Shown in pieces: positions 10,544-52,116 of a stretch of 64,000 nucleotides of DNA (position 1 is the stretch's first letter; the number at the start of each line of letters is the position of its first letter). Both the position numbers and the translations under genes were made by a program. The notes beneath the pieces are model-generated. The model was not told where the DNA came from and did no database searches. It worked only from the letters and a program-made list of their open reading frames with translations. This DNA comes from Magallana gigas (taxonomy: Eukaryota), in the NCBI RefSeq assembly GCF_963853765.1, contig NC_088860.1:25668001-25732000 (forward strand). The letters are read 5' to 3'.

Positions 10544-13500
10544 TTCTAGTCGATCTTTTTCTTCGAACTTAAATGGCTAGCTACTTGTTTTATGTGTTTG
10601 ATAAAAGTTTAAAAATTCATGATCTCTTGTAATTTGAAAAATTGGAGCAAAAAAACACACATGGAAAGAAATTCTAAGACCTTTATGAGATGAAAATTTA
10701 CCAAAAATTCATGAGCATAGGGTAGTTTGTTTGGATACATTTTACAAAGTTGACAAAAAGATTGTGTAGTAGATTAAAATTTACAATAAGCTATCTGTCA
10801 ACAGAACATTTTATTACATTGCAAAAGCTATCCGTCTAATATAAAAAAAAAAAAAACTTGCCGTTAGAGACAATTTGACAAAACTGTTTGTTGTGTGTAT
10901 GTCTGGTCAATCTGGTTTCTCAGGGGGCTAGTAAAGTTTTTAGAAATATATCACTTGGCTGGACGAGATTGTCTCTTCAAATTCTGAAGTGTCAAGTGTT
11001 TTAAAATTCCACTCAATGTTTATTAAAGTTATAAGTCTTTTTTACCTACCATTTTGTTATCAATAAGAAAGCTGCTAAATTGAAGAAGTATTATTTGCAT
11101 GTTATACCAATAAAAAAAGGAGAATAATTTTTTAGAATATAAACTTTTATTTAGTAAATGAAAAATCCATATATTTCACTTTCAAGTTTGGGTATTTTTC
11201 TTTTAGTTTTATAAAGAGCCCTTCTTTTAAAAGATCTAAAGAGTCTTAACATGGCCATGACTATCGAGCTCTCTTAAAGGGAAAAAATGTAAATACCCTT
11301 TATTAATTTCAATTTTACTAATCCTCTTTAAAACTATTTACATTCTGTGAACTTGCTTAAACATCTCTCAATAATGAAAATTACATTTGAGAGGATATTT
11401 TTACATATCATAGCAATGAAGAGAAACACTTGTATTGTTATGGCGATAATTTTCAAAAGACCTTTGAAATATTTATTTCATTTTAAATTGTGTGATGAAA
11501 GAAGCCTTACGTAGACTTTGTGGTCTACAAATCAATCATCAGATCTATATACAATTTAAGGCAGATATGTGACTGATGACAATTTAAGAAATAATAAAAA
11601 AATTTCCAACTGGCATTTGCATTTTTATGAGAAAAAAAATGGTTACTACTCATCAATTTTTGACTAGAAAGCACTAAGGACAACTTATATGAATGACAGG
11701 TCACCATAGATTAACGGATTTCAAGAAAATCAGAAAAAAAGTTTTTGTTTTGTTATATTTTTTATATCAAATATGTACACATTCTTTATCTGGTAGAGTT
11801 TGTGAAATAAACTAATATGCAACTATTGCAATCCCAGAACATTAAATTGTCTATTTTTGAAGTTTGTTTTATAACACAATTTATGCCGAAACATAGTTTT
11901 AAAATATACATATTGAATGATATATTAAATAGACGATTCAAGCATGCTGTAAAATTTGTCATAAAGAAAAAAAAAAGTTAAGAAGATTTTGAAAAAAATG
12001 ACGAAAAAATGCTTCTAATGATATGGTGATAAACTTAACATTTTTATGGTACCCTGCTTCTGATTAAAGGGTGTTAAAGTCAATTTAAAAATAATTTCAA
12101 AGCGGATTTCTCCTGTGTTTCTTTTCAGAGTAGACCTACATTGCATTGAAACTAAAATGAAATGTAATTTTGTCGAAGCAGCAAAAAGAAAGTTTTTTTG
12201 ATAAGATGTTATAAAGTTAAAAAAAATATACTATTATTCTCATATCAGATCAGGTTTTGCCGTTACCAATTTTCCTCAAGGTAACACACAGCCTCTGAGT
12301 TGAGTAATTTGTAAATTTTTGCGACGAAGGGGGTCTGATTAAATATATATATTATAATGTCTGTCGAAATACTTCTGAGTGAATAAAAATCAAATAGTTG
12401 GAGGCCCAAAAGAACCCGAAAGCTAATATTTTTTTCGTACAGAACTTGCTGTCTTTAAATTTCTGTGTTGATTAACCTGAGACAGTCGAATGTTTAAGGA
12501 CATCTGCATAGTACCAGTCTTACATGTACGTTAAATATAATGTTATACCGATGGTTAGCTCACTAATATCGTACTACCAAAGGAAAGTTTGTAGATGGTC
12601 GTTACAAAATGATGGCGTCATAACAGTGTCTAAACACAGAAAAAATACAAATGTTCTTAACTTAGTGCATGCGACCCTTACAAACCAAAGTAAGGCATCT
12701 GTATGTGTATACATTTACAACTTTATCAATATTTACTTTTAAGATAAGGAAAGTCTACGTGATCCTCTTATAAATACTTTGAATAGATTCTAGGGTTAAA
12801 AATAGACATTGGCCATTCATCAAATGGTTTCAACTCCTTGGAAGTATATTTTCTTTAATTCTGTAAGACAAAATATGAATGATAAGAATAATTATTACAA
12901 TAGTTGATATTTTTGATAAAAAGGTAAAAAAAAAAAAAAAAGCTTGGTTCGATAAATAACATGCTATCAAATATTTCCATATTTATTTAATAAGAAAAAC
13001 AGAAATTGAAATGATATAGTACAAAGGTCAAATTCAGTTAGATGGTTACATATATAAGAATATTATCAATCAGTTTGCATTGGTATTGATCTATTTACAT
13101 TTTGTTAAACGAACTTGCACACGACGTCTTGCAAAACTTACGAGTAAGAATTGTATTCTTATGTATGAATTTAAATGAACGTATATTCGTGTGTTGTTCC
13201 CTACTCGATTCCCAGTAAGTTATAGATTGAATAGGAAAAGTGACGTACATTTTCTGTACATTTACTGTAAATGCAATGCAAATCGATTCTGGTAGAATTC
13301 TAAAAAAAACTTCCAAGGCAGGTGTGTTTTCTTTTCTTTCTTTTTTTTTTTTGGCAGACATTGAAATAAAATTGTAAAAAGAAGGTGAATTTTCAGAAAC
13401 AACGCAAGAATTTAATAATAAAAAGAAGGTGTAAAATGGATATCTCTTTTCAGTTTATTTGCTCTTCTTGTACCTTACGCTTCCACAGGTCAAATGTGTT

Positions 13501-28851: not shown

Positions 28852-29016
28852 NNNNNNNNNNNNNNNNNNNNNNNNNNNNNNNNNNNNNNNNNNNNNNNNN
28901 NNNNNNNNNNNNNNNNNNNNNNNNNNNNNNNNNNNNNNNNNNNNNNNNNNNNNNNNNNNNNNNNNNNNNNNNNNNNNNNNNNNNNNNNNNNNNNNNNNNN
29001 NNNNNNNNNNNNNNNN
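28852..29016. other. Assembly gap (165 N)
   Basis: Run of N characters. Confidence 1.
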
Positions 29017-30184: not shown

Positions 30185-31180
30185 ATGGCCAACAAACTCC
30201 AGGCATTACTTCTCTTAACGGTGGTTGTTTTTGTTGCAGAGGCCCGAAGAAATGTTGCAACTTTGTTTTGCAACGATATCAGAACCATCAGGTAAAATAT
30301 TTGAATTATTTTTTTCGTGAATGTAACGCAAGAACATTTATGTTTAGATGTGTATTGTAATATTTAATACCTCTATGCCCTTATTAAACAAGAAAATAAA
30401 TTATGAAAAAAAATAATTTTGTTTGATATATCCGAAATTTGTAAAATTTTCTGATTTTATTTTTTAAAAAACCTAATCGTTTATCTAATTTACTGATATT
30501 TCTCTCGTATATGAAGGGCTGAAGTCGAGGTCAACAATGGAGAAACCTTGTTCGTACCTGCAGACTGCATTAAAGGGCGAATTCAGTGGAACCTACCCAA
30601 TCCATCGACGGAGCTCGATGTCCAATTCCAAAGTCAGAACCCATCCAACTGTTTCGTCAGCAACTATCCCGAGAGGTTTGCCAACTATGAGGTTATAGAG
30701 GACGGCATTTCTACTAAGCCATACAGGGGTAATTTATTTTACGTTTAGAAAAAATCACACTACTATTGATATTAGAATTTCAGAAATCGAAAAGATAGAA
30801 ATTATTTAATAAGAGGATTTTGTGGATACTATCTATTTTTTTTTTTCGTATTGTTCTGAGGGTATTATTGTGTAATTTGATTCAATGATATATATCTCTC
30901 ATCATTTTTATTTTTTCGGAGAATTGGATGGTAGTTCCTCTCTGATTATTTTCATATTTTAATATCAAAAATTAATTTTTAAACGTGAATAAACCATATC
31001 TGCATTGAATTTGGATACTTTAGATAAAACGTATTTCTTAAAAAAAAAATGAAATGAACTGAACAATTTCTTATCATTTTTTTTTCAGGAAATGAACATT
31101 GTATTTCTACATCCAATGTTCAACTATCTGTTCCCGTGAGGTACTATTTGGTCTATATCAATTTTGAGTTGCGACCTTGA
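30185..31180 (+). CDS. Secreted 136-aa protein, meteorin-N-terminal-domain-like (possibly molluscan vdg3-type)
   Basis: Exons 30185-30291, 30517-30728, 31089-31180 (phases 2, 1; 411 nt). Signal MANKLQALLLLTVVVFVAEA, four Cys, CIKGRIQWNLP and C-terminal INFELRP resembling meteorin CAEGAVEWLYP and FRFELRE. Gene structure is solid; family identity is inferred. Confidence 0.82.
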
Positions 31181-34596: not shown

Positions 34597-35228
34597 GTCA
34601 ATCTTCTAAGCTCTGCAACTGCTTTTTCAGACAATGCATTAACAGATAATTTGTTGTAGCCAAAAAACGAATATTTTAGTTTATGTACATGTAGAACCGT
34701 TTTCACAAAAGCTTGGATTTTCGATGGGATGTTACTATCTAGTTTGCTCATCAAAACAAGCTGTCAAATATTTACCTTCTTTATTCTAATTCGCTAAAAG
34801 AAGCTCATTAATATTCATAGACTGTCAAAATCGGAAAGCCCCCCCCCCCCTTATACAAGAACTCCTCGGTTGTGTAAAAATGACGCTGTTTCAACTAAAA
34901 TAGACAGCCCTGGATAAAGTCAATTGCGTATCACTGTATTCACATCTGTCAGCCAATGACTGGACGGTTAATTAACCAAGTAGACCCCACCTTCATCAAA
35001 TCGGAGTTTGTCACGTACTGATCAACGCCAAGCTCTAGCTAAAACGGTTCTATATTAGAAAAAATTGTAGCTGTATTTCACAGATAACAATTTTCATTAC
35101 ATATGTATAATGAAAATGTGATTTTTTTGTTGCAATTATCCCCGTTGGTGTTTGTTGTTGTTCGTCTTTTCTCTGTTTAAAGATTAAAAATCCGATAAAG
35201 TTGTTTAAAGTTTATTCAGTTTTAATGG

Positions 35229-35480
35229 AACCATTTTAACAAGAGCTTGGGTTTTGGGTAGTTGGTGTCAAACAGCATTGTGACATAGGTCTGTCTATTT
35301 CATTGCTGGCAACTCAGCCATTGCTCTTTGAAATCAACAAGAATTGTCTAGCTTTTGAGCTTAAACTACGCAATCCGTTTGTATTTCACTTGAAACCAGC
35401 GTCATTTTCTACTTGTTTTGATGCAAGAAATAGATAGTTACGTCCTACTGAAAGTCCAAGGCCTTGTTAAAATGGTTCTA
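35229..35480 (+). mobile_element. ~250-bp MITE, family X copy 1
   Basis: Terminal inverted repeats aaccattttaacaag / cttgttaaaatggtt; internal sequence shared with three other copies. Confidence 0.85.
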
Positions 35481-35561
35481 ATTATAAAAAAGGCAACATG
35501 AAAAAAATTGAAAACCATTATTGATTCACATACTTTAATTTGGCAAAAGCATCTGAACATT

Positions 35562-38486
35562 TTAATGATTTCCTTCCCTGTCTTGGCACGTTCCAGGTTC
35601 GACCTTCACACTGAAATGATACAGCGTTGTGCCCTTGGTCCAAGAGTTATTCCACCTAGTGTTACAACCATTCTTGTTGTTGCATTTGGCTTTCAGACCA
35701 AACTAAAATAGCAAAAGTATACAGAAAGACAGGTGAATAGAATTATGAATATTCAAAACTAAAAACAAAATAAACAGATAAGTAAATACATGTATAGAAT
35801 AACAAATATTCAAAACTAAATCCATACAAAAAAAATTTCGCGTATTTTGCGAGATCCAGGTTATTTCCTTTAAAATGCGAAAAAAGCTCGTTTAAGGTCA
35901 ATGAAAACCGCCCACCTGAAAATAGTGCCTGTGTTGACATTTAGGGCTGACATCTATACACGTCGTTCTCTGCCAGTCGTCGGAGTACGCGTCCGTCACG
36001 TGATAAGCGTACACGAGGTGCGAGGCCCAGACACACGGCCTGCTGTCCGGGGGAGCTGAACAGTGTGGTCCGGAGTTATCTCCCCAGCATGGCGGGGTCT
36101 GGCCCACGTTTCCACAAAGTCTCGTCTTGATCTCAATGGCGTCGAACTCTCGCGGAGACTTAAAGACCGGATGGCGGGTTTTGTAATCGGTCTCCCACAC
36201 CGACATCGAGTAGGACAACACCAGGCGATAATTGTCCTCTGTAAGAGTCAGATTCCTGTCAAGTTGTAAACTTTGTATCTATTGCCATTTTTTTTTAAAT
36301 TTTGAATTTACCGGGTGGCAGTATATGTAAAATTTACAACATGACAGATTAGTGTTAGATAGGGCGATTTAAAGAAGCACTACGCAAAAAAGTTTGACAG
36401 TTCTGCAGTCAATTTGTGGGCGCACAATTTTAAAGACTGAAACTCTTTTATGCTTAGAAGCAAATAACTTATCAAAATTCGAAACAGTATTACCAGTGTT
36501 CAAATATACAGATAATGTATTTTTATATGACATAAGTTAAATAAAATGCCAGAATGTCCTTTTTCATTTTTTTCTTCATACGTATTAAATCTCTTTTGAA
36601 ATTTTTTTAGTCTTTTTTTAGTAGAAGTGCTTCTTGTTTGATAGGAGATAATTATATACAATGTAGTAAGAGGGTTTTTTTAATATCAATTTAGACAAAA
36701 TAACACTCTATTTATACTTCATCATTTTTAAATGATAAGCTTTTTATACGTACTTATTGCTACATTCTTGCTTTCCATTGTAATTACTGCTCCTTGCTTC
36801 GTATTGTCTGGAAACCAAATCTTATTCTGCAAATTCATATCAAATCATGTTAGTAAGGCGGTGTTACTGGTACTGAAGATTTTCAGTCAATGTCGTTACT
36901 TTATTGGGCTTTTCCAGTTAATGGCATTATTACACTGGACATTTTTAGTCAATGACATTATTACACTGGACATTTTTAGTCAATGCCATTATTACATTGA
37001 AAACTTTCAGTCAATGACATTATTACATTGAACATTTTCAGTCAATGACATTATTACATTGGACATTTTCAGTCAATGCCATTATTACATTGGATATTTC
37101 CAGTTAATGACATTATTACATTGGATAATTTCAGTTAATGACATTATTACATTGGATATTTTCAATTAATGACATTATTACATTGGACATTTTCAGTCAA
37201 TGACATTTATTTATTACATTGGACATTATTAGTCTACAAAACAATGCTTAGGTCTATCAAACTCACGTTGAATAGGGAATGTTTTCCGATTATTTTCTTG
37301 AAAAAACATTCTTCATTGTCATAATGTTCACATTCAGCTTAAAGAAAATAGTAGAAAAACATATGTTTAGAAATATTAAAAGAACCCTGTTACAGTTCAG
37401 AATATTATATATACATTATTTAAATACTTGATCATATTTTCAAAAATTCATATCGTATCAATATTAAAAAATATCAAAGAAACTTGTCACGTTTTTCCTT
37501 GCACATCAATCTCATTAGTTATGTAGCTGTTAAATTTAAACAAAATTAAAACTGTACACATAATTTCAAAGTAAAGGTTTTTGTTTCTTTTAACAAATAT
37601 GTGAATAAATCAGTAGGTTAATTTGACAGTATAATAAACAAATTTACAGCGCAATATACGATATCGATGAATACATGTGCTTGATGTGTCTTACAGTTGA
37701 ACTGGCATCTCCTCCCCCAGTAATGGCCGTCGCATAAACATTGTACCGTCCAAGTAGTATTTCCATCAACACACAGCCCCCTCCCATGGCAGAAATAGGG
37801 ATATCGAGCGCACACACCTACAGATATATTTATTGACAACTCATCAGAAAAGAAAAATTTTGGAAAAATGAGAATATGGTTAATTTTGTAAAACATACTT
37901 AACCAACACTGCTGTCTGGTGATCATTGGTAATAGAAACACTGATACAGAATTTGCAATACATAAGTAATTCTAAAAAATTTAGGGTCAAAAGAGCTAGG
38001 CAAAATAAGTTAAAGATGAAAAATACACAAATTCATGACTCGTTCTTTGATGTATATCAAACTGATTTTAAAATAGCCAGTTTAAGATATTGTTCAAAAT
38101 TTAAAAGCACAATAGTTTGTGGTTTGTTCTTAAAAATATGGGTTGTCATGTTGCAAAATTTTGTATTTACAACCACCCAGTAAATTCAAAATTTACAACA
38201 TGACAATATCCCTGCATCTATAACTTGTGAAAACTAGATCTTAAGCTCAATGCTAGGACTAGAAAGAGAGGCAATGCACTAGTATGTATCAAGCCTATGT
38301 AAAAATTACACAAATGAGAATAGAACGTTATTGTTATGGAAAACTTAAAAAAAAAAAAGACAACTCACTATTACACGTTTCTGTCGACCTTTTGGAAATT
38401 TCTTCGTTTTGTGAAAAATATTCCGACTCTGATGCAGCTGAAAGAGGAAGCATCAAAACGAGGCATGGGATCAAGTACACCATCAT
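35562..38486 (-). CDS. Paralogue A: secreted EGF + divergent MAM-like protein, 282 aa
   Basis: Exons 38486-38369, 37817-37695 (EGF), 37337-37267, 36826-36754, 36238-35916, 35702-35562; all GT-AG, phases 1,1,0,1,0; 849 nt open. Signal MMVYLIPCLVLMLPLSAA; EGF CARYPYFCHGRGLC...CLCDGHYWGRRC. Confidence 0.88.
36876..37230. repeat. 31-bp minisatellite, ~11 copies, in intron 3 of paralogue A
   Basis: Unit cattggacattttcagtcaatgacattatta recurring every 31 nt. Confidence 0.93.
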
Positions 38487-38901
38487 CTCAACCCTCGGAA
38501 CGATAATAAAACATGGACTTTGTCTGTTACCACTAAGTTATATTGATGTTCCCTAATGCAGTTAATTGATTTTAATATTTATTTCAAGAAAATAACAAGT
38601 TAGCATAAATAAAAACATTTATCTTTAATTGAATATCTTAGTGTTTATCTGGATTCAATTTTTTCTCTCTCTGAATAATTATACGCAAGTTATTAAGATA
38701 CGATCTAGTCATTAATATCTCTTATCCATTATCCATTAATATCCATAATATCGGTATATGATTTAAAGTCCCTGCTATATTTACAATGTCATCTGATAAT
38801 TGATGGTATGTATGCATGTATAATTGCGCTGCGTTAGTAACATTATAAACTTACAGAACGGATAAAATATATGAAATGAGTAATGAAAGATTTAATAGTA
38901 G

Positions 38902-38953
38902 TGTCCTTTCTGATATATTTTATTTGATAAAATGAAATATATCAGAAAGGACA
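38902..38953. repeat. Perfect 19-bp inverted repeat (hairpin)
   Basis: tgtcctttctgatatattt ... aaatatatcagaaaggaca with a 14-nt spacer, flanked by gtag on both sides. Confidence 0.85.
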
Positions 38954-40433
38954 GTAGCATTGTTTAGTCGAACATAAAAAATCTTCTTTTTTTTGCCATT
39001 TTAACATTCAGAGTTTGTTTCTGTACATGTACCATCATTTGAATGTCTGATTCAAATTAAACGTATATACATCAATAAAATCAGTGATTTCATTTAAGGT
39101 CTTTCGATTGTCGTGTGACGTCATTGTGAGCAATCCGGAATATTTTACCGTTATCGGTTATAATAATAGTGTTATGTGGTGCATAGTTTTGCCAATATTT
39201 CTTGATTTATACTTGTGTTTAACACATTTTAAGCTATGTAAAGTGAAATGACACCAATGTTTAACAATTCATAGAGAGTAGTTTGAGTTGAAATCGCTGA
39301 ATTCAATGAAAAACTGATAAAACCGTATATAGGCAAACTTGACAGAGACCACAATTCATAATTTTTTACCTGGCAAGGTAAACATTTCTTTGCAGATTTC
39401 GATAGGATATATAATGAATTACAAATGTACCAATTTTCAGTGAGTTTGAACCATTATTTCAAAAGTTATAGACGTTTTATGTTGCTAAACTGTACTTATT
39501 CATGGTTGAAAAATCGTATCAAAATGCACTGTAAATGTGATAGCTTTCATACTGGCAATTTTAAATGGCCTTAAAATGTTAAAATACTTAAAATAAAGGA
39601 TTGCGATTAATTTCTTTTAAGAATTGCTTTATTATATCGAAATTAGTTAAAATAAATGTGATGTTTGATAAGAGAGCAGTCGTTGCTTAAACTGTCCTGA
39701 GAGTGTACTTGTGTTAGCTCCTACAGCATGAACAAAATATTTGCAACATACCAATATTTAACTTTAATTTGATTGTTTGCATATTAATCATCAAACTTAA
39801 ACAAAAATTACACAGATTAAACCATAAAAACATCGAGGGTGGAGAAACCTTAATTAATATATTTAAGATGATTGAGTTCCATCTGTCGTTTTGTATTTAT
39901 TGATAGATGCAGTATAATAAATCAGAAGAAGTGGTCTTTCGTTCACACTCGGTGTTGAAATCTTGGGTGTTTCCCGTTTTGGGAGCTTTATTTGCTAGTT
40001 TGTTGTTTTGCTTTGTTGACAGAAGTTAATTAAAACATCTGTGGAAATAATGGTTACATTTACTGGTGTCCTGTTTCACAAATTTGACATTGACTAGGTA
40101 TAATATATTACTTCGTAATCAATCAAAACTTTAACAACTTTGAGAGCACGAACTGCTCGGACTGACTTCAGACTTACAAGAAGTTATAGCAACCATATAT
40201 ACATGTATATTTTGTTTCTTCGGTGTAATTAACGTGCTCATTGACAATAACAATAAAGAACGTACTTATATACTTACTTTATACGTATAAAAAGAGACTA
40301 AAATGCTTATTGTTTATAATAACCCGCAGTTTCGTGTATTTTACTGAAATGCTTGGTACATTCATCCATGAAACCGCATGAAACACATAAAAAGAATATT
40401 TATTGTTTCATTGAATTGAACTAAATATAAAGT

Positions 40434-40684
40434 AGAACTATTTTAACTAGAGCTTGGACTTTGGGTAGTTTGTGTCAAAAAGTAATATGACGTAGGCCTG
40501 TCTATTTTATTACTGGCCACTTAGCAATGGCTCATTGAAATCAACACGATTTGTCTGGCTTTTGAGCCAAGACTTTGCAATAAGTGCATATTTTACTTGA
40601 AACCCAGCCTCACTTTTAACTTTTTGACGCAAGATATAGATAGTTATGTCCTACCGAAAGTCCAAGGTCTTGTTAAAATGATTC
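40434..40684 (+). mobile_element. MITE family X copy 2
   Basis: Same internal sequence as 35229-35480; degenerate TIRs. Confidence 0.8.
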
Positions 40685-40743
40685 AACTATTCGAGCTAAC
40701 ATATGAGCTATGAGGTATAAACGGACAAAGATAGGAACTAAAC

Positions 40744-40931
40744 TACTGTATATCCGGCAGTTTTCGCGATGATCTAATTTTACTGAATACGTAGACACTA
40801 TATCCTGCACATTTACTATAAGACACTTCGAAAATCGCAAGAAATGACTCACGCAAAATGAAAAGTGCTACACATTTTCCCCATTTACGAAAATTTTGTG
40901 ACACGCGAAAATAACCCACGAATGTACGGTA
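40744..40931. mobile_element. TA-flanked MITE (Tc1/mariner-like), family Y
   Basis: Ends tactgta / tacggta; homologous to 62826-63038 (shared gctacacattttcc...aaattttgtgac.cgcgaaaa). Confidence 0.7.
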
Positions 40932-41059
40932 TAATATGTTACCGGTTTTTATCATCCGATGAGCATGAAATGGACGGGTCGTTCTGTTGTTAAAAAAAAG
41001 TTTTTCTGTAACATAGAATTCGAATACAGGCATTACAAGTTCCAGGGGAGATAACTTCT

Positions 41060-41534
41060 ATACGGTAATGATATAACTTAAATTATCTCTTCTTTTTTTT
41101 TTGTAGAATATCATACTTTTATACTAAAATGCTTCAAAACGAGCAGTTTAAAAATTCATTACATCTTACCCAATGAAATCATAGTTACTAGATATCATTC
41201 TGTTGAATTTTAGTTCTGACAAGCGAACGTGGTTTTTAATTGAACAAAAGTAAAAACCTTATGGTATGTATAATGTATAATTTCATTTTATTTCTTTTTC
41301 GAATTTGTTTTCCAAGAGCGTAGTGCATTGAGTTAGAGCGTTGATTACAAATCTGTAAGGAATGAGTTCGAATCCCTTTGGGCCTTTCACGTTTTTGACC
41401 TTTCCAAAAAAAATTTAAAATTATGTTTTTGGTCAAATAGTGTATAAACTGGAAATTCTAAAACTGTGAAAATTTTTTGACTATGATGTACTTTTATTCA
41501 CGCCAATATCGACAGGTGTCCCATACCACCTCAA
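41060..41534. mobile_element. Partial DNA transposon containing a tRNA-like segment
   Basis: Right end gtgtcccataccacctcaa; internal A/B-box-like stretch (gagttcgaatccc near 41364) without a full cloverleaf. Left boundary approximate. Confidence 0.5.
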
Positions 41535-41810
41535 TCACTTTTCGAGGACATCGATTTTCGTGGATTAAACAAAATTTCCACTTTAGTTAAAAGCGGACAA
41601 CTTTACCACCAATAACACGATTCGCTATAAAGTTAAATTAGAACTCTTTCGACTATAACACTACAATTGAAGTTTTGTGGATGTGAGAGAGTTTCAGTCG
41701 AATGTATATGTGTGCGTGATCCACTCCAATCAATGTGACAATTCATGATATGTAAAAATGCATCGTCATGGCCATTTTAGACGATATTATATTTTATTAT
41801 ATGATTGATT

Positions 41811-42040
41811 AGAACCATTTTAACAAGACCTTGGACTTTCAATAGGGCGTATTTATCTATTCCTTGCGTCGGTTTCAAGCGAAATATGCATCGATTGCGT
41901 AGTCTTAGCTTAAAACCCAGACAAATCTTGTTGATTTCAAAGAGCCATGGCTGAGTGGTCTTCAATGAAATGGCCAGGCCTATGTCACATTGTTGTTTGA
42001 CACAACTACCCAAAGTCCAAGCTCTTGTTAAAATGAATCT
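41811..42040 (-). mobile_element. MITE family X copy 3
   Basis: Reverse-complement match to copy 1; TIR agaaccattttaacaag. Confidence 0.85.
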
Positions 42041-42542
42041 GATTTCTAGCTCTGATTGGCTCATATCCAACTATATAGAAAAAAATAGAATGTTAATATA
42101 TTCACCTGCACGTGATCTAAGAGGTCAATATAACATTGATTTTCTCTACATTCGACAATAGATCATCCAATGAAATATTGCGTTTATCAATTTGTTCGGT
42201 TATGTCTTCAAACTAAAACATTTAATTTGATATGTCTGTATCAATTCGTCGCTGAATCATATATTAAAACAATTAATACTTCCGCATCCGGCTTGATAAA
42301 TATTGTACTTCTCGGGTAGCTAAATCATCGTATTGACCCCAAAAACAGAAATAATTGTATAATTTTGTATAACAATATAGAGAATACATGTAGTTTATAG
42401 CTAAAAAATCATATCACAAATTTTGAGGAAAATCTGATGGGTAATTTGTTGACCAATCAGATGCCTCCTTAATAATACACGGATCCTGTTTTGGTTTTTA
42501 ATCATTTATTCTGATATTTTTTCACACATTTTTTGTACATAT

Positions 42543-44539
42543 CTAATGCTCAAAATATTGACATGTTCCGAGCTCAAGCTTCAAGGAAAACTTGATACTG
42601 GTTGACCCCGTGCCGTGAAGGTTACAGCCCCTTGGGTTGTTGCACTTGGTTCTGACACCAAACTGAAAAGAAGGGTTCGATACGTAAAAAACTAAATTTA
42701 ACGATGTTTAAGAATTGAACCATTCTAATGCCACTTTAAAGTCTTTTCATATACATAATTATAGCAGATCTTACATTCTTTTATGTCAACTTTTGATTTA
42801 TTCATCGTTAAAAATAATACTGTACACTCACTTCCATAAAACGTCTTTCTCCCTGCGGGCTCACATCAATACAGACAACTCTCTTTTTGTTGGCGTAATC
42901 GTGTGGGTAGTAGGCGTAATGAACGAACTTTTTCTCTGTGCACCAGCGATCCTGGCGGTCTTGTTCACTGAGTCGGGAACATTCAGCCTCGTTCTCAAAC
43001 GCGCAGACTCCGTCTGCTCTATCTCTGCAACCTCTGAACATGATTTCCATCGTATCAAAATCGTGCGGTTTCCAGAAGACGATCTGCGGCTCGTAATCAT
43101 GGACATTGGCCGCCATTATGTAAGTCAAGATCAAGCGACGTGGTTTAACTAAGAAAAAAAAAGAATCAAAACTACTTCAAGTAGACATCGATATTCATCT
43201 AACTGCGCCTTTCGAAAGTTTAGAAAATCTGCATAGATTTGTATTAAAGATTAAACCTATAGGCAATACTAGAAACTAATATATTGGTTGTCTATTAGAG
43301 TAAACTGGCTTACATATCATTACGGGGTTTGTTCTTCCTATGAATACTCCATCTTTTGCGGTCTCAACACTAAAAGCTCCCTGATGAAAATAAAAAAAGA
43401 AAAAGAGACATTTTAACCATTTTAGATTCTATAAAAAAAACCATCATCATTATCTTAATATTTTTTTGTTAAGTCTTACGCTGTGCTCATTTATTGTGTG
43501 TGGTCCGTGCATTCTACTGAAGAAAAAACAAGATGGGTTGTGTCCCAAGCAATCATCTAGCAATGAAAATAAAGCTTTTAACTAGATATAATTATGTAAA
43601 TCAAATAACATGCTAAGGGAATTTGATCAAACTTGTCGGTTCTAAAGTTGCCAAAGATCTTTCCTTTTACTTGCTCGAATATTTTGAATCATTTATTAAG
43701 AGTTAATTATTGGAATATTTCCGTTTTCTGCTTTTCATTGCAGCCAGCTGTCCACGGAGTGTCCAAATTTTATATAAAGCAATAGAATTTACTTTTAGTT
43801 TAATGGACGTAAATTTTCTGTGAATAAAAAGTACATATAATTAAAGTGTAAAATTGTATATGCAGTATCTTGAGGCCTTGTTAAGGGACTTCCATAATTT
43901 TCGCACAGAAATTTTGTTAAAGGCACGTGGTTTGGTTACGTTGTAAAATGTTCACTGTTCATGAATTCGTACCATTAAATTCACAGTGGCGCCCAAAAGA
44001 CCCTCTCTCACACTGACAGTGAGTGAGTCGTGGGTTGTGGGTGTTGAGACACAGGCCTTTCCCACCGCAGAAATCCGGAACCCTGTCACATTCACCTAAA
44101 TGTAAAAGATCCATCATATATCATATCGTTAATGACGTTAATGAGAAAATAAATTTGATTTAAGGGGGCCGGATGGACGTGGCCATATTTTCTACTTTGT
44201 CTACCTCATTGAAATGAAGATCTCTGTCAAAAATATATAAAGGGAAAAATCAGACTTTAAAGCTGAACTACATGGAGGATTTTCTTCACTAAATAAACGT
44301 TTATAGCTTTAAAAAAAATCATATCTAGAAATTAAAGGTAGATCTGACGGTTAATTTGTTGACCGAACAATCTCATTAATTAGTTTCACGAATTGACTCT
44401 CTCTTTAAAAAAAAAAAAAGAATAACATACCGCATGCCTCTCCGTATTCTCGTCTCTGCAAAACTTTTTCAATATCGACAGAGCTTAACTCTGCAAAAGC
44501 TAAATGGAAAAAAGCTAAAACGAAAATAAAATTCCGCAT
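42543..44539 (-). CDS. Paralogue B: secreted EGF + divergent MAM-like protein, 270 aa
   Basis: Exons 44539-44431, 44095-43973 (EGF, 123 nt as in A), 43556-43480, 43380-43314, 43148-42832, 42662-42543; same phases as A; 813 nt open. Shares RLxLxYxM, FDxxEI, YAY, CIDVSP, FGxxxKCNNxxGC and ExGTC with A. Confidence 0.9.
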
Positions 44540-44754
44540 GTTTACGTTGGTCGACCTCTTCTGATAGTATGATAAGTTTATAAAGAGAGTTGAAACAAAA
44601 CTTATATTTTTATCGATTTTATTTAAAAACAAATGCTTTTATCGATGTAAAAGTTTGCGGGGTAATTACTTTAATTTATGAATATTTTTTTTTAATAAAT
44701 ATATTTTTGTATTTACATTAGTAATTAGTATCAATATACGTTGTAATTTAAAAG

Positions 44755-46882
44755 GCGATCCTATTAAGATTACTGTTGATCTGCATTTTAGCAATTATGA
44801 GGTAAATTATTTACATTAGCAATCAAAACTGATAATCAAGCATGTAATTAATAAAAGCACTTACTAAATGTTAGTAGTGATGCCATCGTGTTTTTATACT
44901 CGAATATCATTTCTATAAGAGATGTATAGAAAATTGGATTATATACATAATTAAAAAATATAACAATAAAACATCTGTGCAAAAAAGCACTCAGAAACAT
45001 TTCTTTTTTATATAAATTCTAGTTTGAAGGTACAAAATGTAAGAATTGCGCATGGAATGCTGATCACAAAACGAATTGCGTACTCGGCAATGGCGTACGC
45101 GAAAACTGTATGTAACAGGCAAGCAAGAATGGGGCAAGCAAGAATATGCATGCACTCATCTTTAAGCTTTGCACTTCGCAATAACCAAAAAGGGAACCGA
45201 CCTTAATGAAAAAAGGCAACTTTTTCGCCTTTGTCAAATCAAAGACGAAATTACTTGTAAATAAAATGGTGATTGGTATTTTTTGGAATCAATAGCTAGG
45301 ACATTCAGCTGAAGAGTGCAGCTTAGGCTTAAAGAAATGTCATTCAATGAAAAGAATAATTATATGTGAAGGTTATACAGCCGATTAACTGGTGAATGAT
45401 ACATTTGTTTAATTAATGAAATATTAATTTGAATCGAATTGAAGCCAGAATGAATATCTTTTCAAGATTTCTTATTTTCAACCGGTGACATCAAAAGAGC
45501 TAGAAAAGGACTAATTGGATATTAAAAGGGTTTATTTTTTCTTAATCTGCTGTGCATAAATAAAGATAAATTTTGCAATTGGAATCAAGCTATTAAAAAA
45601 AGAATAAGAATATTGTATTGGGATATACATGTAATTGGTTTAGTAACTACTTGCAGTTGGATAATTTTCCCTCAAAAATGTTCTTTTCACGGCATTAAGG
45701 GTCGTGTGTTCAGTATGTGTACAGTCGTAGCATCATGAGCAGATACAGGAGCCAAGACAGTGCATGTGAGAATGCATTTAATACCAAAAACTTTCTGTTC
45801 AAAATATGTTCACTTAGTAAGCATTCGCAATGTTAAGCATACTAGTATTTCTCTACAATCTCATTCTTCCCATGAGGTGATAAAACCCTTTCAGGGATAA
45901 CAAACTGAAAGTCGTTACATGTATATTACTTCTGGTCATTTCCCCCCATAATTCAATGCAGTGAAACTGCATTACTTACATTGTATTTACGATATGATTA
46001 CTTATTTACTATATGAAGTTTATTACAAGTTCAGTGTTTAAAAAAAAACTTACCGTATTTAGAGCAAACTCGATCTTAACAGCAATAAGTTATTAAAGGA
46101 AATTCAATTTTTTTATATACACGTATATTAAATGTCGTGTTCCTGTATATGCCATGGTGTGTGGAATCTTTTGATATGTCACTTTTAAGCGTGCGTGCCT
46201 AAAATTGAGAAATGTGTATAACGTGCTTGTTAGTTGAGAGTAAAAAAAGATACCTAATAAGGAAGGATCGTATTATTTTAGTAAAATCAAAGTTAATACC
46301 ACTGCACTCAACATATGTTTTACTGATATGAGTTTTATCCTATATCTAATAATTATGCAAACTTGTTTTTAGCCATGCCGTATCAAAATTATACATTTTT
46401 TTACATTTGCATATTAAACAACCCAAAAAGAAAAGAACAAATTATTTCAATAGATATTATAGAATATTGCTATCAACTAGTTGTTCTGAAAAATTAAAGA
46501 CTGAATTTCATTTATAGCAATTTTTATTTTCATCTTTTTTTCTCCGTTTTCTCACTTTTTAAGATTTGAAAACTACGAAAATTGTTAAGTCGTACGTAAA
46601 AAAAATTATCCCCCTTGTGCCGAGCAGTATTTCAACCAATGTAATAAATGTAAATTTTCACGTCATGTAACTATATTCTACCAATCATAATGCACAGGAA
46701 GTGCACAACCCGGAGACTGTAAATTATATCAACTCTTTATAAGGAAGACGGTAAATAATGTGAGCTATGGCAAAAATGGCAACCATTGTGGTTCCTCATC
46801 AGTTACCTTTCCTGTAATATTTTCATCATTCCAAAACACTTGGATATTTTATGATCAGAAAATACCATCAGACCGGAAATAG
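44755..46882 (+). pseudogene. Orphan exon-like segments, possibly a Cys-containing extracellular-domain remnant
   Basis: 44755-44801 (DPIKITVDLHFSNYE) joins in frame to 45023-45107 (FEGTKCKNCAWNADHKTNCVLGNGVREN, donor gtatgt); open segment 46698-46882. No start exon found, and the last two do not join directly. Confidence 0.22.
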
Positions 46883-47931
46883 AAAGCACAAGAGAACTGA
46901 TTTGTTCTTCTGTGCATAAATGACGTAAAAGGCTTAAGCAATTTGATACCTTTTTTGCCAAATATACCGAGTAAAATACTTTAAAATTGATTTGTTTTTG
47001 ACAGCATTTTTTTTTATGTACATGTATACAACATACGAAATTCCCTAGCCTTTTTTATTGAGGATTATTTCTTTCTCTTTATATTGTATTTATTTAGGGT
47101 CGTTGCGTTTTTGGAATGTTTAACTTGTCACTTTGTCAGTTTGTGATTAACGATTTCTAATCCTATGTTTTCAGTTTGTTGTATTTTATGACCTAGTTAT
47201 TGGAAATTACACTTTTTCTCTCAATACTGTCGTATCGAAATCGCCTTATATATATATCATTGCACATCAAATTTACACATTAGATTCAAGTTCAATTCCC
47301 CTTCGACACCCCCACCACCCCCTCCCCAATTTCTTTCCTTGTCCTGACTCTTACAACACGACACAACACAACACACAAAAATTCAACACAAAGTACTTTG
47401 TATTCTCATTTATTGGATTAAGACATCAAGCAACCATAAACACTTTCAATGACTGCACCCGGATGTGGTTTCCTGTATGGTGACCCCCATCAGGGAAATC
47501 TGGGTAATGTCCTGGTAATCGACAGCTTTTGCACACTTCGTAGAGGCACAAATAATTTTGAAAGATATCTGCAAGAAATTGATCAATCTAGTTTTATAAA
47601 CATGTAGGATGGGTTTTTTTTGACATGTACGTATGAAGAAAGGGTAGGGCTGTAGGGAAAATAGGCTTTGCCCCCCCCCCCAATACACCCCGGAATGAAA
47701 ATCTAGATCCACGCCTCAGATATAATTTACATCTATTTCATTGTGTATTTGAAAACCGAATTCTTGACTAAATGAATGATTATATCTAAGTTAAGATGAT
47801 TTAAATTATTCATCATACTTATCCTTCTCAGACAAGAATAGGTAAAATATTTTATTCCGAATGTTTTACAATTAAATCTGTTAGAAAAGTTATTAATTCT
47901 AAAATTATTATGTGTGTATATGTATTTTCTT

Positions 47932-47935
<4 letters not shown>

Positions 47936-47983
<48 letters not shown>
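47936..47983. repeat. (GA)n microsatellite
   Basis: About 24 units, immediately after a paralogue C splice donor on the minus strand. Confidence 0.97.
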
Positions 47984-47989
<6 letters not shown>

Positions 47990-48625
47990 GCAAACTTGGG
48001 GTCTCCGGTTTTGGGCAGCTCTATACAGAACTGATTTGATACGACATGGTTCTTAAACTGGGGTCTTTCCAAAGTTCTCAGGACCTGGGGCTCGGCGTAG
48101 GGACGTTGTAGAATTACTATCACTTTGTCTGCCTGGATTGGTACATATTGTAATGCATTGTAGAACATCACACGGAAGAAAAGATTGTGCTTTTTGTAAC
48201 CTACAAAGGTAAGAAGCTGTAAATGTCATCGCCATTTCACTAATGTAAAATTTATAACTAGCGGAAATCTGTACTGTGTAACGGGAAAATGTTCCCTATT
48301 CATTTTTTTATCCATTTTCTTTCATTCTTAGTTGGCGAACTTAATTTTCTATAAGTGCAACTGTGTACGGGCAAATAAAAAAGGGTGAAGTCTTAAACAT
48401 CCGTGATTTGGCAAATATAACACTAGTAAATATAACTTTAAAAGAAATACCCTGCTAGCACTCACCCCAGTAAATTTCACCCGTTGTCAGTACGGTCTTT
48501 CCTCCTCTTGGTAACTTAGCAATCAACTGGTTCGACGCCACATAATGCTAACCAAAAAAAAAAAATGATTCTAAAATTGAACCATTCAATCACAAAAATA
48601 TGTAATAGAGACATTTAATACATCT

Positions 48626-48682
48626 GCTGGATTTGAACCCGGGTCCCCTGTCTTTCAAAACCAGCACCATACCGATCGAGAT
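48626..48682 (-). repeat. tRNA-derived (SINE-like) fragment
   Basis: B-box GGTTCAAATCC on the minus strand; no complete tRNA stems. Confidence 0.45.
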
Positions 48683-49925
48683 ATTTAGGACGTAACTCAC
48701 AGTTTATATTTCGTAAGAATGCCACATTTCTGACAAGTATTTTTATCAATTGCATTTTCTCGGGCATTTTCGGCAGAGTCCGACTGTTTTACCGAGCTCT
48801 GTCGGAGAGGCCCAAGAAGATGCGAGCGACAGAACAAAGAGATATCAATTGATTGTGTCTGTTTCTTTATAATTACAGTAGTGGTATAAATGGTACAACT
48901 TTACGTGATGGTGTAATAACATCAAACAGTCTTGAATCATGATTCTATTGGATGCAACGTAGTCGGGTTCCAACAAAATAATTTCTTTATTCAATATCAA
49001 TGAATTAAATCAAATGGAAACATTGTCTGTGTTTACAACTTACAGTTTCGTGCAGGATCCATTGTCCCAGGCTTCTTCCACTCTCAAACGATTTGAGAAA
49101 GACACAGGCGTGTGTCTTGCAAGAATGATCTGTAAAAATATTTTTAATCATAGCTTTTAGATACATGTAACTATTCGTTCATGGTGTAAGGTCATGGCAT
49201 GGTCTCTTATGTACTACAAATACTATTAGTTTCATAGCATATTTCATACATGTTATATGTTAAATCATGTTAAATGATACTGGTATATACTGAGAATTTG
49301 ATATTAATATGATAATATATAAAGTGGAATGAAAACATGACCAAATCTAACGCAGGATATAAAAGATTTGACAAAACGACCATGAGTTTAGGTACATGAT
49401 ATCTGCTCTCTGGATCATGAAGCATTTTTAGACTTGATTAAGTCCAAATTTCAACCATTTATAAAATTACAATTTTTTCATAAAAGTACACTCGAAATAT
49501 GAAATCATCAACATAATATAGAGACACATTTTAAAAAGCATTTCATTTTTTCGATGTTTTACATCACAAGACAAAACAAAAAGACAGTGACTTTAGTCTA
49601 AGACTGCAGAATGAAAATTTAATATACTAGTATATAGAAATCATTACCTAGTTTGATGCCGCACACGTGTCCGACATAATTGTGCAGTAGCAGACAGGGC
49701 GGTCTCCGTCCACGTGACAAATCCCACCATACAGGCAGACATTTCCACTACACGGTGCTTCATAAAAGTTCAAATATTATATTTCATTCTGCAAATATTT
49801 TTTATTGTTCGTCTTCCTTATCTGCCCCCACCGTCACCAATTTCTCTTTTTATCATTCATTCAACGCAGTTCTCAACTTAAATCATTTTAGGAAAAATGC
49901 ATATATTTGAGGTCAAAAATGCTCA

Positions 49926-50100
49926 GGGTGTATTCGTTTGGTCGATTGGAGAACTGCAAGAGTAATCCTTATTTTCTCGTTTGCAATATGGAGATATCCG
50001 GTAGATCTACATTGTCTACTTTCCAAATAGCAGGTAGTCAATGGAGATCTGCTGGAGATATTCGGGACCAGTTCTGGAGGTAGCAAACGAATACACCCCT
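49926..50100. mobile_element. ~175-bp MITE, possibly PIF/Harbinger-type
   Basis: TIRs gggtgtattcgtttg / caaacgaatacaccc; tca on both flanks as a possible 3-bp TSD. Confidence 0.75.
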
Positions 50101-50531
50101 CAGACTTGAGGGCTGGTATTGACTTGAGGAAAGTTGCCGTCAGTGGGGCCTGGTCACAATTTGACGTAGATTTTTGTAATGGTTATAAAACAATGTAGAT
50201 GTACATTTGCATAAATATATATTAAATATAGATTTAAATACGAAATTGTAAAATGAAATCGGCATACGATCAAAACGGGGTTTTTTTTTAGTTAGAGACA
50301 GAACGCCCTTTGTTTTAAAGGATAACTCCAATTGTATTGTGTTACTATTTAAAAGAGGCACATCATCTAAAGCTAGAGTGATTTTTGAATTTTGAAAAAT
50401 TTCATCCCGCAATGATATTGTTTGGATTTAAATTCCGGTTTTATTTTTTGGATAAAAATTATCATTTCCAAAGGAATTTTTCTAAGAGTTTATCATAAGG
50501 AAGGGGGTTGTTTTGTTCTTTTATTAAGACT

Positions 50532-51833
50532 AGTAGGGTGATTTCACCATGCATCGGACACCTTTGGATTTTTCCCTTTGTTCACGCATCAAATATCGTC
50601 CAAATATAAATAAAACTTGTTTTAAAAGTTACAGGTTTTCCCCTTGCTTAATTATTGGAGAAAAAATTGTGAAATTGTTAAAAATGTAGAAAATAAAGCA
50701 AATTAATGAAGCGTTGAACTATTTCACCATGGATCGGACAATATTTACCAAGCATCGGACAGCTATAGCAGTGCAGTAGAGATTAAAAATAACAACATTT
50801 TCTGGTTTTAATGCAAAAATACAAATGTTCGGAAATATTAATTTATTCAATTGCTATTCATATTTCTTTTAATGTAAATCCTCAAATCTACATATAGGAA
50901 TTTAGACTGGTGCTTTTGTTTAAAGGAATATTTATCATAAGGGGTTCTTTATCTTGCCAGCTCCTACAGGAACTTTGGACTTAAAAGGGTGTGTCCGTAA
51001 AACTCGATTTTTAAGTGGTTTGAGGAAAATGTTTGTTTCAATTATTTTTTAAATTTTTATTTTACTTCACATTTAGAGTATATCACAAGGAATGGGCACA
51101 TAATCTCCATATTATTAGAAGAAATCATGCAGGGAAAACTGTCCGATGCATGGTTAATTTGCGTCCGATCCATGGTGAAATGAACATATGGTGCAATAAT
51201 GACCTTGACATTAATTGTTCAAATTTCTTGGACTTATTTTAATCAAATTTTGTTTCAAAACTTACTTCTTTCTAATTATGTTACACAGAGAGTGCATTTT
51301 CACTAATTCACAATCAAACGCACAACATTCAAATAATGCTTTAGTGTAAAATCTTCGTAACTAAATTTTCAATAATGGCGTATTTGATGTCATTTTACGA
51401 TGTCTATATTGTTATTTCTTTGACAATGTGACTGTCAAATTCTTAATAATGATAAAGTTCATTTGTTCTAATTCAGGAATATACGAAACAACATATGAGC
51501 GCATGCACATTTAGAACCATTTTAACAAGGCCTTGGACTTTCAGTAGGATGTAACTATCCATTTTTGCGTCAAAACAAGTTAAAATGATGCTGGTTTCAA
51601 GCGAAATGTACACCGATTGTGTAGTCTTCGCTCAACAGCCAGCCAAATCCTGTTGATTTCAAAGAGCCATGACTGAATGGCAAGCAATGAAATAGACAGA
51701 CCTACGTCACATCGCCGATTAACACAACTACCCAAAGTCCAAGCTCTTGTTATAATGGTTTTATTTGTATTTTTTATAAACAAAGTTGTCCGATCCAAGG
51801 TATGTGTCCGATGCATGGTTAAATCACCCTACT
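50532..51833. mobile_element. ~1.3-kb non-autonomous TIR transposon in intron 2 of paralogue C
   Basis: 30-bp TIRs agtagggtgatttcaccatgcatcggacac / gtgtccgatgcatggttaaatcaccctact (one mismatch); related internal motifs near 50725 and 51140; no transposase ORF. Confidence 0.85.
51511..51758 (-). mobile_element. MITE family X copy 4, nested in the 1.3-kb element
   Basis: Matches copy 3; TIR ttagaaccattttaacaag. Confidence 0.85.
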
Positions 51834-52116
51834 GTTTTTAAAAAAAATATACTTACAACAACTTCCGGGGGGCGGAATTTCACTCTGAAATGAAATGTTA
51901 AAAGTAGATTTTTATGTTTTTAAAAACCATTGTGATCAATATAAGAGTTGAAATTGGTCAAAATTTACTTACCCGATCGACCAATTGTTTGTCTTCGTTA
52001 AGGTTGCTTGCAGCTGATACTCCAGCAACGGCTGCGATGAGCAACAGGATTGCACAGTGGATACTCATAATCAAACTGCAGAAGAAGACTAAATGAACTG
52101 TCCGCTACACTTTCTC

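What the first reader, a model, noticed from the sequence alone, without database searches (positions are those of the whole stretch)
35562..52068. Hidden tandem family of three secreted EGF-domain proteins with a shared unannotated C-terminal domain
Seen: three co-oriented genes, mostly invisible in the ORF track, share signal peptide, short propeptide, phase-1 EGF exon and the same downstream intron phases (1,0,1,0). They share C-terminal motifs (CIDVSP/CIELP; x6-C-x4/5-C...G-x0/1-C) yet are very divergent. I recognise no named family with this compact architecture. Inference: an old, diversified bivalve family of secreted ligands or matrix/adhesion proteins; the best candidate for an undescribed system in this window.
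Basis: partly seen in the sequence, partly recalled or inferred. Interest (0 to 1): 0.85.

Follow-up and report, generated by a model that had tools for sequence, protein, structure and literature searches.

The report
Oyster secreted EGF plus MAM-like proteins
Three neighbouring Pacific oyster genes encode small secreted proteins made of one EGF module and a very divergent MAM-like beta-sandwich; the family is real and so far seen only in oysters, but it is already annotated as uncharacterized, and the third gene carries a 4-base frameshift in this assembly.

Summary
The observation largely holds. Three co-oriented minus-strand genes lie at 35562-38486 (g1), 42543-44539 (g2) and 47446-52068 (g3). 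Each has a signal peptide, a phase 1-1 EGF exon and four further exons with intron phases 1,0,1,0.

- **Gene models.** My g1 and g2 models equal RefSeq proteins of Magallana gigas (LOC105344529, 282 aa; LOC105344528, 270 aa). Spliced RNA-derived contigs give the same junctions.
- **g3 is broken here.** g3 is LOC105344527. Its EGF exon is 4 nt shorter than in C. angulata, which shifts the frame and gives a TAG at 49650-49648. No CDS is called there in this assembly.
- **Conservation.** All three genes lie in the same order in C. angulata and C. virginica. Saccostrea has g1 and g2. Non-synonymous change is low (omega 0.05-0.18 against C. angulata).

Best reading: secreted EGF plus divergent MAM-like binding proteins, so far seen only in oysters. 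This is a new variant of a known architecture (compare EGFL6 and nephronectin), with function untested.

The parts
35562..38486 (-). g1 = LOC105344529, 282 aa. Coding exons: 38486-38369 (signal peptide plus acidic leader ending KR), 37817-37695 (EGF, phase 1-1), 37337-37267, 36826-36754, 36238-35916 (large exon with a 4-Cys insert and CIDVSP), 35702-35562 (last exon, stop included).
   Evidence: My model is identical to XP_034330890.2 = P0005. The RNA-derived contig L007 gives the junctions of exons 1-5 exactly.
42543..44539 (-). g2 = LOC105344528, 270 aa. Coding exons: 44539-44431, 44095-43973 (EGF), 43556-43480, 43380-43314, 43148-42832, 42662-42543.
   Evidence: Exon 3 was found by enumerating phase 1-to-0 exons. 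The model equals P0013 = XP_034330888.2. A gene with a 270-aa product is called at the same range. Contig L008 gives the junctions of exons 2-5.
47446..52068 (-). g3 = LOC105344527 (246 aa in older M. gigas records), frameshifted here. Exons: 52068-51973 (signal peptide), 51884-51857, 49757-49648 (EGF exon, 110 nt instead of 114), 49129-49044, 48547-48466, 48200-47989, 47568-47446.
   Evidence: Models. All other exons are co-linear with P0059/P0060. No CDS is called here in this assembly. A 247-aa product is called at the matching place in C. angulata.
49683..49686 (-). Site of a 4-nt deletion in the g3 EGF exon relative to C. angulata. The exact place is ambiguous within these bases because of the local GC/TG repeat.
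   Evidence: blastn of window 49800-49620 against L004 shows a single 4-nt gap opposite L004:3500-3503. tblastn of P0059 changes frame between 49684 and the following residues.
49648..49650 (-). In-frame TAG created by the frameshift, immediately before the GT donor of the g3 EGF exon.
   Evidence: frame translations.
35916..36236 (-). Largest exon of the g1 MAM-like domain (107 aa). It includes a 4-cysteine insertion of about 37 aa that g3 lacks.
   Evidence: It was the query. In the model the insert has low confidence (residues 173-191). Alignment.
37695..37817 (-). g1 EGF exon.
   Evidence: Pfam EGF_Tenascin scores 25.7 bits against a cut-off of 25. A profile of g1 orthologues matches EDIL3 EGF at E 5e-5 and epidermal growth factor at E 0.008.

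Best explanation
The stretch holds a three-gene tandem family (g3, g2, g1 in transcription order on the minus strand) of the Pacific oyster Magallana gigas.

Each gene encodes a secreted protein of 245-280 aa with four parts:
- a cleavable signal peptide;
- a short acidic leader, which ends in KR or RR in g1 and g2 and could be a convertase site;
- one EGF-like module;
- a disulfide-rich jelly-roll beta-sandwich of about 165-200 aa, which is most probably a very divergent MAM-type domain.

Inferred mechanism. The sandwich is the binding or self-association module, as MAM domains are in meprins, RPTP mu, neuropilin and the EGF-MAM matrix proteins EGFL6 and nephronectin. The EGF module is a rigid N-terminal partner or spacer. 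The three paralogues have diverged in the loops, so they probably recognise different extracellular partners. The clearest loop difference is a 4-cysteine insertion of about 37 aa in g1 and g2 that g3 lacks.

Shown here: the gene models, splicing of g1 and g2, secretion signals, the EGF module, conservation of the cluster across oyster genera, purifying selection, and the beta-sandwich prediction with MAM as best match.

Inferred only: homology to MAM, the binding role, and leader cleavage.

In this assembly g3 carries a 4-nt deletion in its EGF exon that ends the frame. This is either a null allele of the sequenced animal or an assembly error.
For: Gene models and transcripts:
- g1 is identical to RefSeq P0005 and g2 to P0013.
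- Spliced Logan contigs L007 and L008 match the junctions.

Modules:
- Signal peptides and the lack of any C-terminal hydrophobic tail are read directly from the sequences.
- EGF.

Common origin of the three genes:
- Same order and orientation, and the same intron phases.
- Three of four post-EGF intron positions fall in the same alignment columns.
- Both predicted structures have the same fold.

Fold:
- AF2 model of g1: pLDDT 60-84 over residues 92-276, all beta.
- AF2 model of intact g3 (P0059): pLDDT 60-85 over residues 115-240.
- The search that does not depend on Foldseek again puts meprin alpha, SR-C MAM and RPTP mu MAM first.
- Swiss-Prot AFDB hits include neuropilin, MDGA1, meprin, the ALK homologue and EGFL6.
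- 29 of the 100 nearest language-model clusters carry PF00629.

Conservation:
- All three genes in C. angulata and C. virginica.
- g1 and g2 in Saccostrea.
- omega 0.18, 0.05 and 0.13 against C. angulata. Against C. virginica pN is 0.22-0.31 with pS saturated at 0.73-0.82.
Against: - No Pfam MAM hit for any member, even at E 10.
- A family profile finds only EGF chains in the PDB sequences.
- Foldseek TM-scores are below 0.5.
- The alignments behind the models are shallow (8 and 13 rows) and overlap, so the two models are not independent. Overall pLDDT is about 55.
- The g3 C-terminal region is not significantly similar to that of g1/g2 by profile comparison (E 0.14).
- No expression, tissue or binding data were obtained. 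No paper mentions these genes.
Confidence: 0.6

Rival explanations
1. The C-terminal sandwich is a glycan-binding module, like a carbohydrate-binding module or lectin. The family would then be a set of secreted pattern-recognition or mucus and matrix glycan-binding proteins of oysters, with the variable cysteine-rich loop as the recognition site.
For: Carbohydrate-binding modules (CBM4, 6, 16, 35, 61), a hyaluronan-binding module and Emp46p/VIP36 lectin domains score only slightly below MAM. Tandem duplication with strong divergence is common among oyster immune lectins (general knowledge).
Against: MAM domains rank first in every structural search. Language-model neighbours are MAM clusters, with only one CBM_4_9 cluster. 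No sugar-binding residues could be assessed.
Confidence: 0.2
2. The EGF module is the active part. g1-type proteins would be secreted ErbB/EGFR-type ligands, and the beta-sandwich would tether or present them.
For: - Cysteine spacing of x6, x5, x10, x1, x8 in g1.
- The residues matching Gly18, Tyr37, Gly39 and Arg41 of human EGF are present (read and from the alignments).
- 13 of 21 PDB sequence hits of the family profile are ErbB ligands: EGF, TGF-alpha chimeras, neuregulin/heregulin, betacellulin and epiregulin (similar result).
Against: - These hits are weak (E 0.003-1). The best hit is an EDIL3 matrix EGF repeat.
- The position of Leu47, needed for receptor binding in human EGF (my own knowledge), is not Leu.
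- g2 and g3 lack the Arg.
- There is no transmembrane precursor.
Confidence: 0.1
3. The C-terminal region is an oyster-specific domain with no true relative. The MAM resemblance would be a generic jelly-roll convergence, or an artefact of low-confidence models.
For: No sequence-level link to any family. Only four hits among 1.84 billion representatives, all oysters. Model pLDDT about 55, TM below 0.5.
Against: Two models with different target sequences give the same fold and the same top family. The sequence-only language-model search also points to MAM. The domain starts with a close cysteine pair followed by aromatic residues, as MAM domains do (my recollection of the family, not tested).
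Confidence: 0.1

Closest known systems
EGFL6 (MAEG) and nephronectin: vertebrate secreted matrix proteins with EGF repeats followed by a C-terminal MAM domain
   Same: Secreted. EGF module(s) lie N-terminal to a MAM-type sandwich at the C-terminus. Mouse EGFL6 residues 303-545 (last EGF plus MAM) align with the whole g3 model.
   Different: One EGF module instead of four or five. No RGD motif (read from the sequences). About 250-280 aa instead of about 550. The MAM-like domain is below Pfam detection. No orthology is shown.
MAM domains of meprin alpha/beta, RPTP mu/kappa, neuropilin-1, enteropeptidase, insect SR-C
   Different: Only 7-17% identity and no PF00629 hit. g1 and g2 carry an extra 4-cysteine insertion. 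There are two more conserved cysteines in the last exon. Those MAM domains sit in large multidomain membrane or protease proteins.
Eph receptor ligand-binding domain and bacterial carbohydrate-binding modules (CBM4/6/16/61)
   Different: They consistently rank below MAM. Eph ligand-binding domains are N-terminal to their EGF-like region, which is the opposite order.
Epidermal growth factor / ErbB ligand EGF modules
   Same: The g1 EGF module has nearly the same cysteine spacing and several signature residues. Weak profile hits.
   Different: Weak scores, no membrane-anchored precursor, no Leu at the position of Leu47, and the feature is not shared by g2 or g3.

Membership tests
MAM domain (Pfam PF00629) | Significant match to the family's sequence profile | tested here: not met
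   hmmscan of exons, full-length proteins and isolated C-terminal domains at E up to 10 never lists PF00629.
MAM domain (Pfam PF00629) | Jelly-roll beta-sandwich of about 160-170 residues that superposes on solved MAM domains | tested here: met
MAM domain (Pfam PF00629) | Four conserved cysteines, with an N-terminal close pair and a cysteine in a 'C-[LIVM]-x-F' strand (pattern recalled from memory) | tested here: inconclusive
   C-x4-7-C opens the domain and C-I-[DE]-[VL] occurs about 100 residues later in all three genes. Disulfide pairing could not be read from the models, and the signature was not checked against a library.
MAM domain (Pfam PF00629) | Profile-profile (HHsearch-type) link to a MAM alignment | not testable with these tools
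   No MAM sequences could be obtained by reference.
EGF-like domain | Six-cysteine pattern with C-x-C and a match to EGF profiles | tested here: met
   g1 exon: EGF_Tenascin 25.7 bits against a cut-off of 25. g2: EGF_2 20.7 bits, below its cut-off. g3: EGF 13.7-16 bits, below its cut-off. PDB profile hit at E 5e-5. The pattern is visible.
EGFL6 / nephronectin family | Several calcium-binding EGF repeats, an RGD-containing linker and a C-terminal MAM domain | tested here: not met
   Single EGF module and no RGD in any of the three proteins (sequences). Only the EGF-then-MAM order is shared.
ErbB/EGFR ligand family | EGF module with the conserved Gly/Arg and a Leu after the sixth cysteine, usually in a membrane-anchored precursor | tested here: inconclusive
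   g1 keeps the Gly and Arg positions but not the Leu. g2 and g3 do not keep the Arg. There is no transmembrane segment. Profile hits are at E 0.003-1.

The most novel reading that the evidence does not exclude
The family is an oyster invention in which an ErbB-ligand-like EGF module is fused to a MAM-like targeting domain. That would make it a new class of soluble growth-factor-like signals in molluscs, with three diverged paralogues and a segregating null allele of one of them.
Probability: 0.1. Interest if true: 0.6.

Novelty: new variant of a known kind. Interest (0 to 1): 0.35.

Why it matters
- **Domain assignment.** It gives a likely domain assignment (EGF plus divergent MAM-like sandwich) to three oyster genes, and their orthologues in at least five species, that public records call only 'uncharacterized' or 'EGF-like domain-containing'.
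- **Annotation repairs.** The C. virginica models of g2 and g3 lack their EGF exons. The S. cucullata g1 model skips two exons. M. gigas g3 is frameshifted in the current reference assembly.
- **Biology.** Small secreted binding proteins that are lineage-restricted and tandemly diversified are candidates for matrix, adhesion, immune or signalling roles in oysters. Nothing here shows which.

Tried and rejected
- **First g2 exon 3 candidates.** My first candidate (43516-43480) has an in-frame stop, and a look-alike ORF ('FLCENYG...', about 43900) has no usable splice sites. Enumerating phase 1-to-0 exons gave 43556-43480, which RefSeq and contig L008 confirm.
- **Aligning short exon translations with full-length proteins.** This misplaced the g3 exons, so only clean rows were used for searches.
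- **Profile comparison.** hhalign of the g3 C-terminal region against that of g1/g2 was not significant.
- **Sequence libraries.** Pfam on all members found only EGF plus chance hits such as MmlI, DUF5450, CoV_NSP15_M and Nairovirus_GP38, all far below their cut-offs.
- **ESM Atlas shape search.** It gave only generic bacterial and viral sandwiches.
- **Paper searches.** Searches for the LOC numbers, XP accessions and SRR run ids found nothing. A topical search found nothing specific.
- **Other copies.** I looked for further copies in the window and for DNA-level similarity between the three genes. There were none.
- No reads were laid.
- **Possible rescue of g3.** I considered that a cryptic donor (T|GTGCGG, inside the EGF exon) could restore the frame of g3. 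It would remove the true sixth cysteine, and it could not be tested.
Full report
**Source of the window.** The window is AT-rich animal DNA. Locus L001, fetched for a protein identical to my first gene model, is Magallana (Crassostrea) gigas chromosome record OY970752.1 of assembly GCA_963853765.1. It carries the same genes at the same spacing, and L005 from the same record is 100% identical to the window over 181 nt at the g3 EGF exon.

**Gene models.**
- I read the minus strand and built exon chains from open frames and AG/GT sites.
- g1: 38486-38369, 37817-37695, 37337-37267, 36826-36754, 36238-35916, 35702-35562. This gives 282 aa.
- g2: 44539-44431, 44095-43973, 43556-43480, 43380-43314, 43148-42832, 42662-42543. 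This gives 270 aa.
- g3: 52068-51973, 51884-51857, 49757-49648, 49129-49044, 48547-48466, 48200-47989, 47568-47446.
- In all three the leader ends in phase 1, the EGF exon is phase 1-1, and the following introns are in phases 0, 1, 0.
- My first guess for g2 exon 3 was wrong (in-frame stop). An enumeration of phase 1-to-0 exons gave 43556-43480, encoding 'DDCLGHNPSCFFF...', which parallels 'SECEHYDNEECFFK...' of g1.

**Independent support for the models.**
- A HMMER search of 1.84 billion representatives with the large g1 exon found four proteins, all from oysters.
- The best hit is a 282-aa RefSeq protein of C. angulata. Its cluster holds XP_034330890.2 of M. gigas (LOC105344529), which equals my g1 model residue for residue.
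- A profile search that also used g2 exon translations returned XP_034330888.2 (LOC105344528, 270 aa), which equals my g2 model.
- Two Logan contigs that encode spliced forms align to the window in blocks that end exactly at my exon boundaries. L007 covers g1 exons 1-5. L008, from a related oyster, covers g2 exons 2-5 with the flanking introns retained.
- The last junction of each gene rests on the RefSeq models and on conservation across species.

**g3 is broken in this window.**
- A profile search seeded with the g3 large exon returned XP_011450612.1 (LOC105344527, 246 aa), a UniProt entry of the same length, and a 145-aa C. virginica protein.
- These proteins are co-linear with my g3 exons, except inside the EGF exon. 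After '...DRPVCYC' they read 'AHNYVGHVCGIKL', which in the window lies in another frame.
- DNA alignment with C. angulata (L004) shows one 4-nt gap in the window, opposite L004:3500-3503. In window coordinates the deletion lies at 49686-49683.
- The exon is therefore 110 nt instead of 114, and the frame ends in TAG at 49650-49648, just before the GT donor.
- No CDS is called at g3 in this assembly. C. angulata has a 247-aa product at the matching place.
- The other six g3 exons are intact. Against C. angulata, g3 shows 7 non-synonymous and 15 synonymous differences (omega 0.13). The lesion is therefore recent, polymorphic, or an assembly error.
This fits transcribed exons.

**Are the three genes one family?**
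- g1 and g2 are 33% identical and align throughout.
- g3 is 17-20% identical to either. Its C-terminal region gives no significant profile-profile score against g1/g2 (E 0.14).
- The case for common descent rests on other evidence:
  - tandem position and shared orientation;
  - the same module order;
  - the same intron phases;
  - exact coincidence in the alignment of the introns after the EGF exon, before the large exon (split codon in one column) and before the last exon;
  - matching cysteine positions;
  - the same predicted fold (see below).
- There is no DNA-level similarity between the copies and no further copy in the window.

**Age and constraint.**
- C. virginica has all three genes in the same order, between an FAA-hydrolase gene and a 136-aa gene on the other strand. 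Its RefSeq models of g2 (180 aa) and g3 (145 aa) lack the EGF exons, but these are present and open at L002:5907-6029 and L006:8891-9004.
- S. cucullata and S. echinata have g1. S. echinata has a g2-like gene about 9 kb upstream.
- Against C. angulata omega is 0.18, 0.05 and 0.13 for g1, g2 and g3. Against C. virginica synonymous sites are saturated (pS 0.73-0.82) while pN is 0.22-0.31.
- The searches could miss relatives outside oysters. The single-sequence HMMER search did not even recover g2, so 'oyster-specific' describes what was found, not a proven limit.

**Protein anatomy.**
- Each protein starts with a hydrophobic signal sequence followed by small residues.
- A leader of 13-20 residues rich in acidic residues follows. 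It ends KR (g1), RR (g2), R (g3) or KKR (Saccostrea), but has no basic site in C. virginica g1. A propeptide is therefore possible but not conserved.
- The EGF module is supported by Pfam (g1 at the gathering score, g2 and g3 below it) and by PDB sequence profiles.
- There is no transmembrane or GPI-like tail.
- The remaining 165-200 residues have six cysteines shared by all three genes. g1 and g2 have four more in an insertion of about 37 residues.

**What the C-terminal domain is.**
- Sequence libraries say nothing.
- The AlphaFold2 model of g1, from an 8-row family alignment, has mean pLDDT 55. Residues 92-276 form an all-beta domain at pLDDT 60-84, and the insertion has low confidence.
- The model of intact g3 (P0059, 13 rows) shows the same picture for residues 115-240.
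- Foldseek lists meprin, the neuropilin MAM domain, Eph ligand-binding domains and carbohydrate-binding modules at E 1e-4 to 1e-3, with TM below 0.5.
- VIA-align ranks MAM domains first for both models:
- The search that does not depend on Foldseek again puts meprin alpha, SR-C MAM and RPTP mu first.
- Swiss-Prot models give the ALK homologue MAM region, neuropilins, MDGA1, meprin and EGFL6.
- A language-model search with the g1 domain has MAM clusters at ranks 2 and 3, and in 29 of 100 hits, at a score the tool calls a lead only.
- My reading: a jelly-roll of the MAM type. Homology to MAM is likely (about two in three) but not proven.

**Function.**
- Nothing was measured, and no paper names these genes.
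- By analogy with MAM domains and with EGFL6 and nephronectin, the most likely role is extracellular binding or self-association, with the paralogues tuned to different partners.
- The alternatives are a glycan-binding (immune or mucus) role and an EGF-ligand role for g1.

My structural tests agree with it and my sequence tests do not reach it.
- The finding is real but less novel than proposed. It is a new, very divergent variant of the EGF-MAM architecture, seen so far only in oysters and already present in public annotation as uncharacterized proteins.

Noticed in passing
window 35228-35482, 40423-40684, 41808-42035, 51511-51772: Four copies (76-86% identical, both orientations) of an interspersed repeat of about 250 bp. 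One lies just downstream of g1, two lie between g1 and g2, and one is in g3 intron 2. It is probably a SINE- or MITE-like element.
   Followed up: partly
window 36874-37234: Minisatellite with a unit of about 31 bp ('aatgtccaatgtaataatgtcattgactgaa'-like) inside g1 intron 3.
   Followed up: no
window 47935-47985: A (CT)n microsatellite starts directly after the donor site of g3 exon 6.
   Followed up: no
window 30185-31180 (plus strand): A gene with a 136-aa product lies on the opposite strand next to g1. It is the conserved neighbour of g1 in M. gigas, C. virginica, S. cucullata and S. echinata (135-137 aa). I did not test that.
   Followed up: no
L002:5907-6029 and L006:8891-9004 (C. virginica): The RefSeq models of C. 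virginica g2 (XP_022287036, 180 aa) and g3 (LOC111099671, 145 aa) start downstream of intact, conserved EGF exons. They appear to be truncated at the N-terminus.
   Followed up: partly
L003:10573-10650 and 10912-10983 (S. cucullata): The 232-aa S. cucullata g1 model (XP_062591390.1) skips two exons that are present and conserved in the genome. The frame is kept because both junctions are in phase 1. This could be an annotation gap or a real short isoform.
   Followed up: partly
window 28852-29016: Run of 165 N (assembly gap or mask). Left untouched.
   Followed up: no
upstream of g3 (beyond about 53 kb in the window; L005:1-902): An FAA_hydrolase-domain gene is the conserved upstream neighbour of the cluster in M. 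gigas, C. angulata and C. virginica.
   Followed up: no
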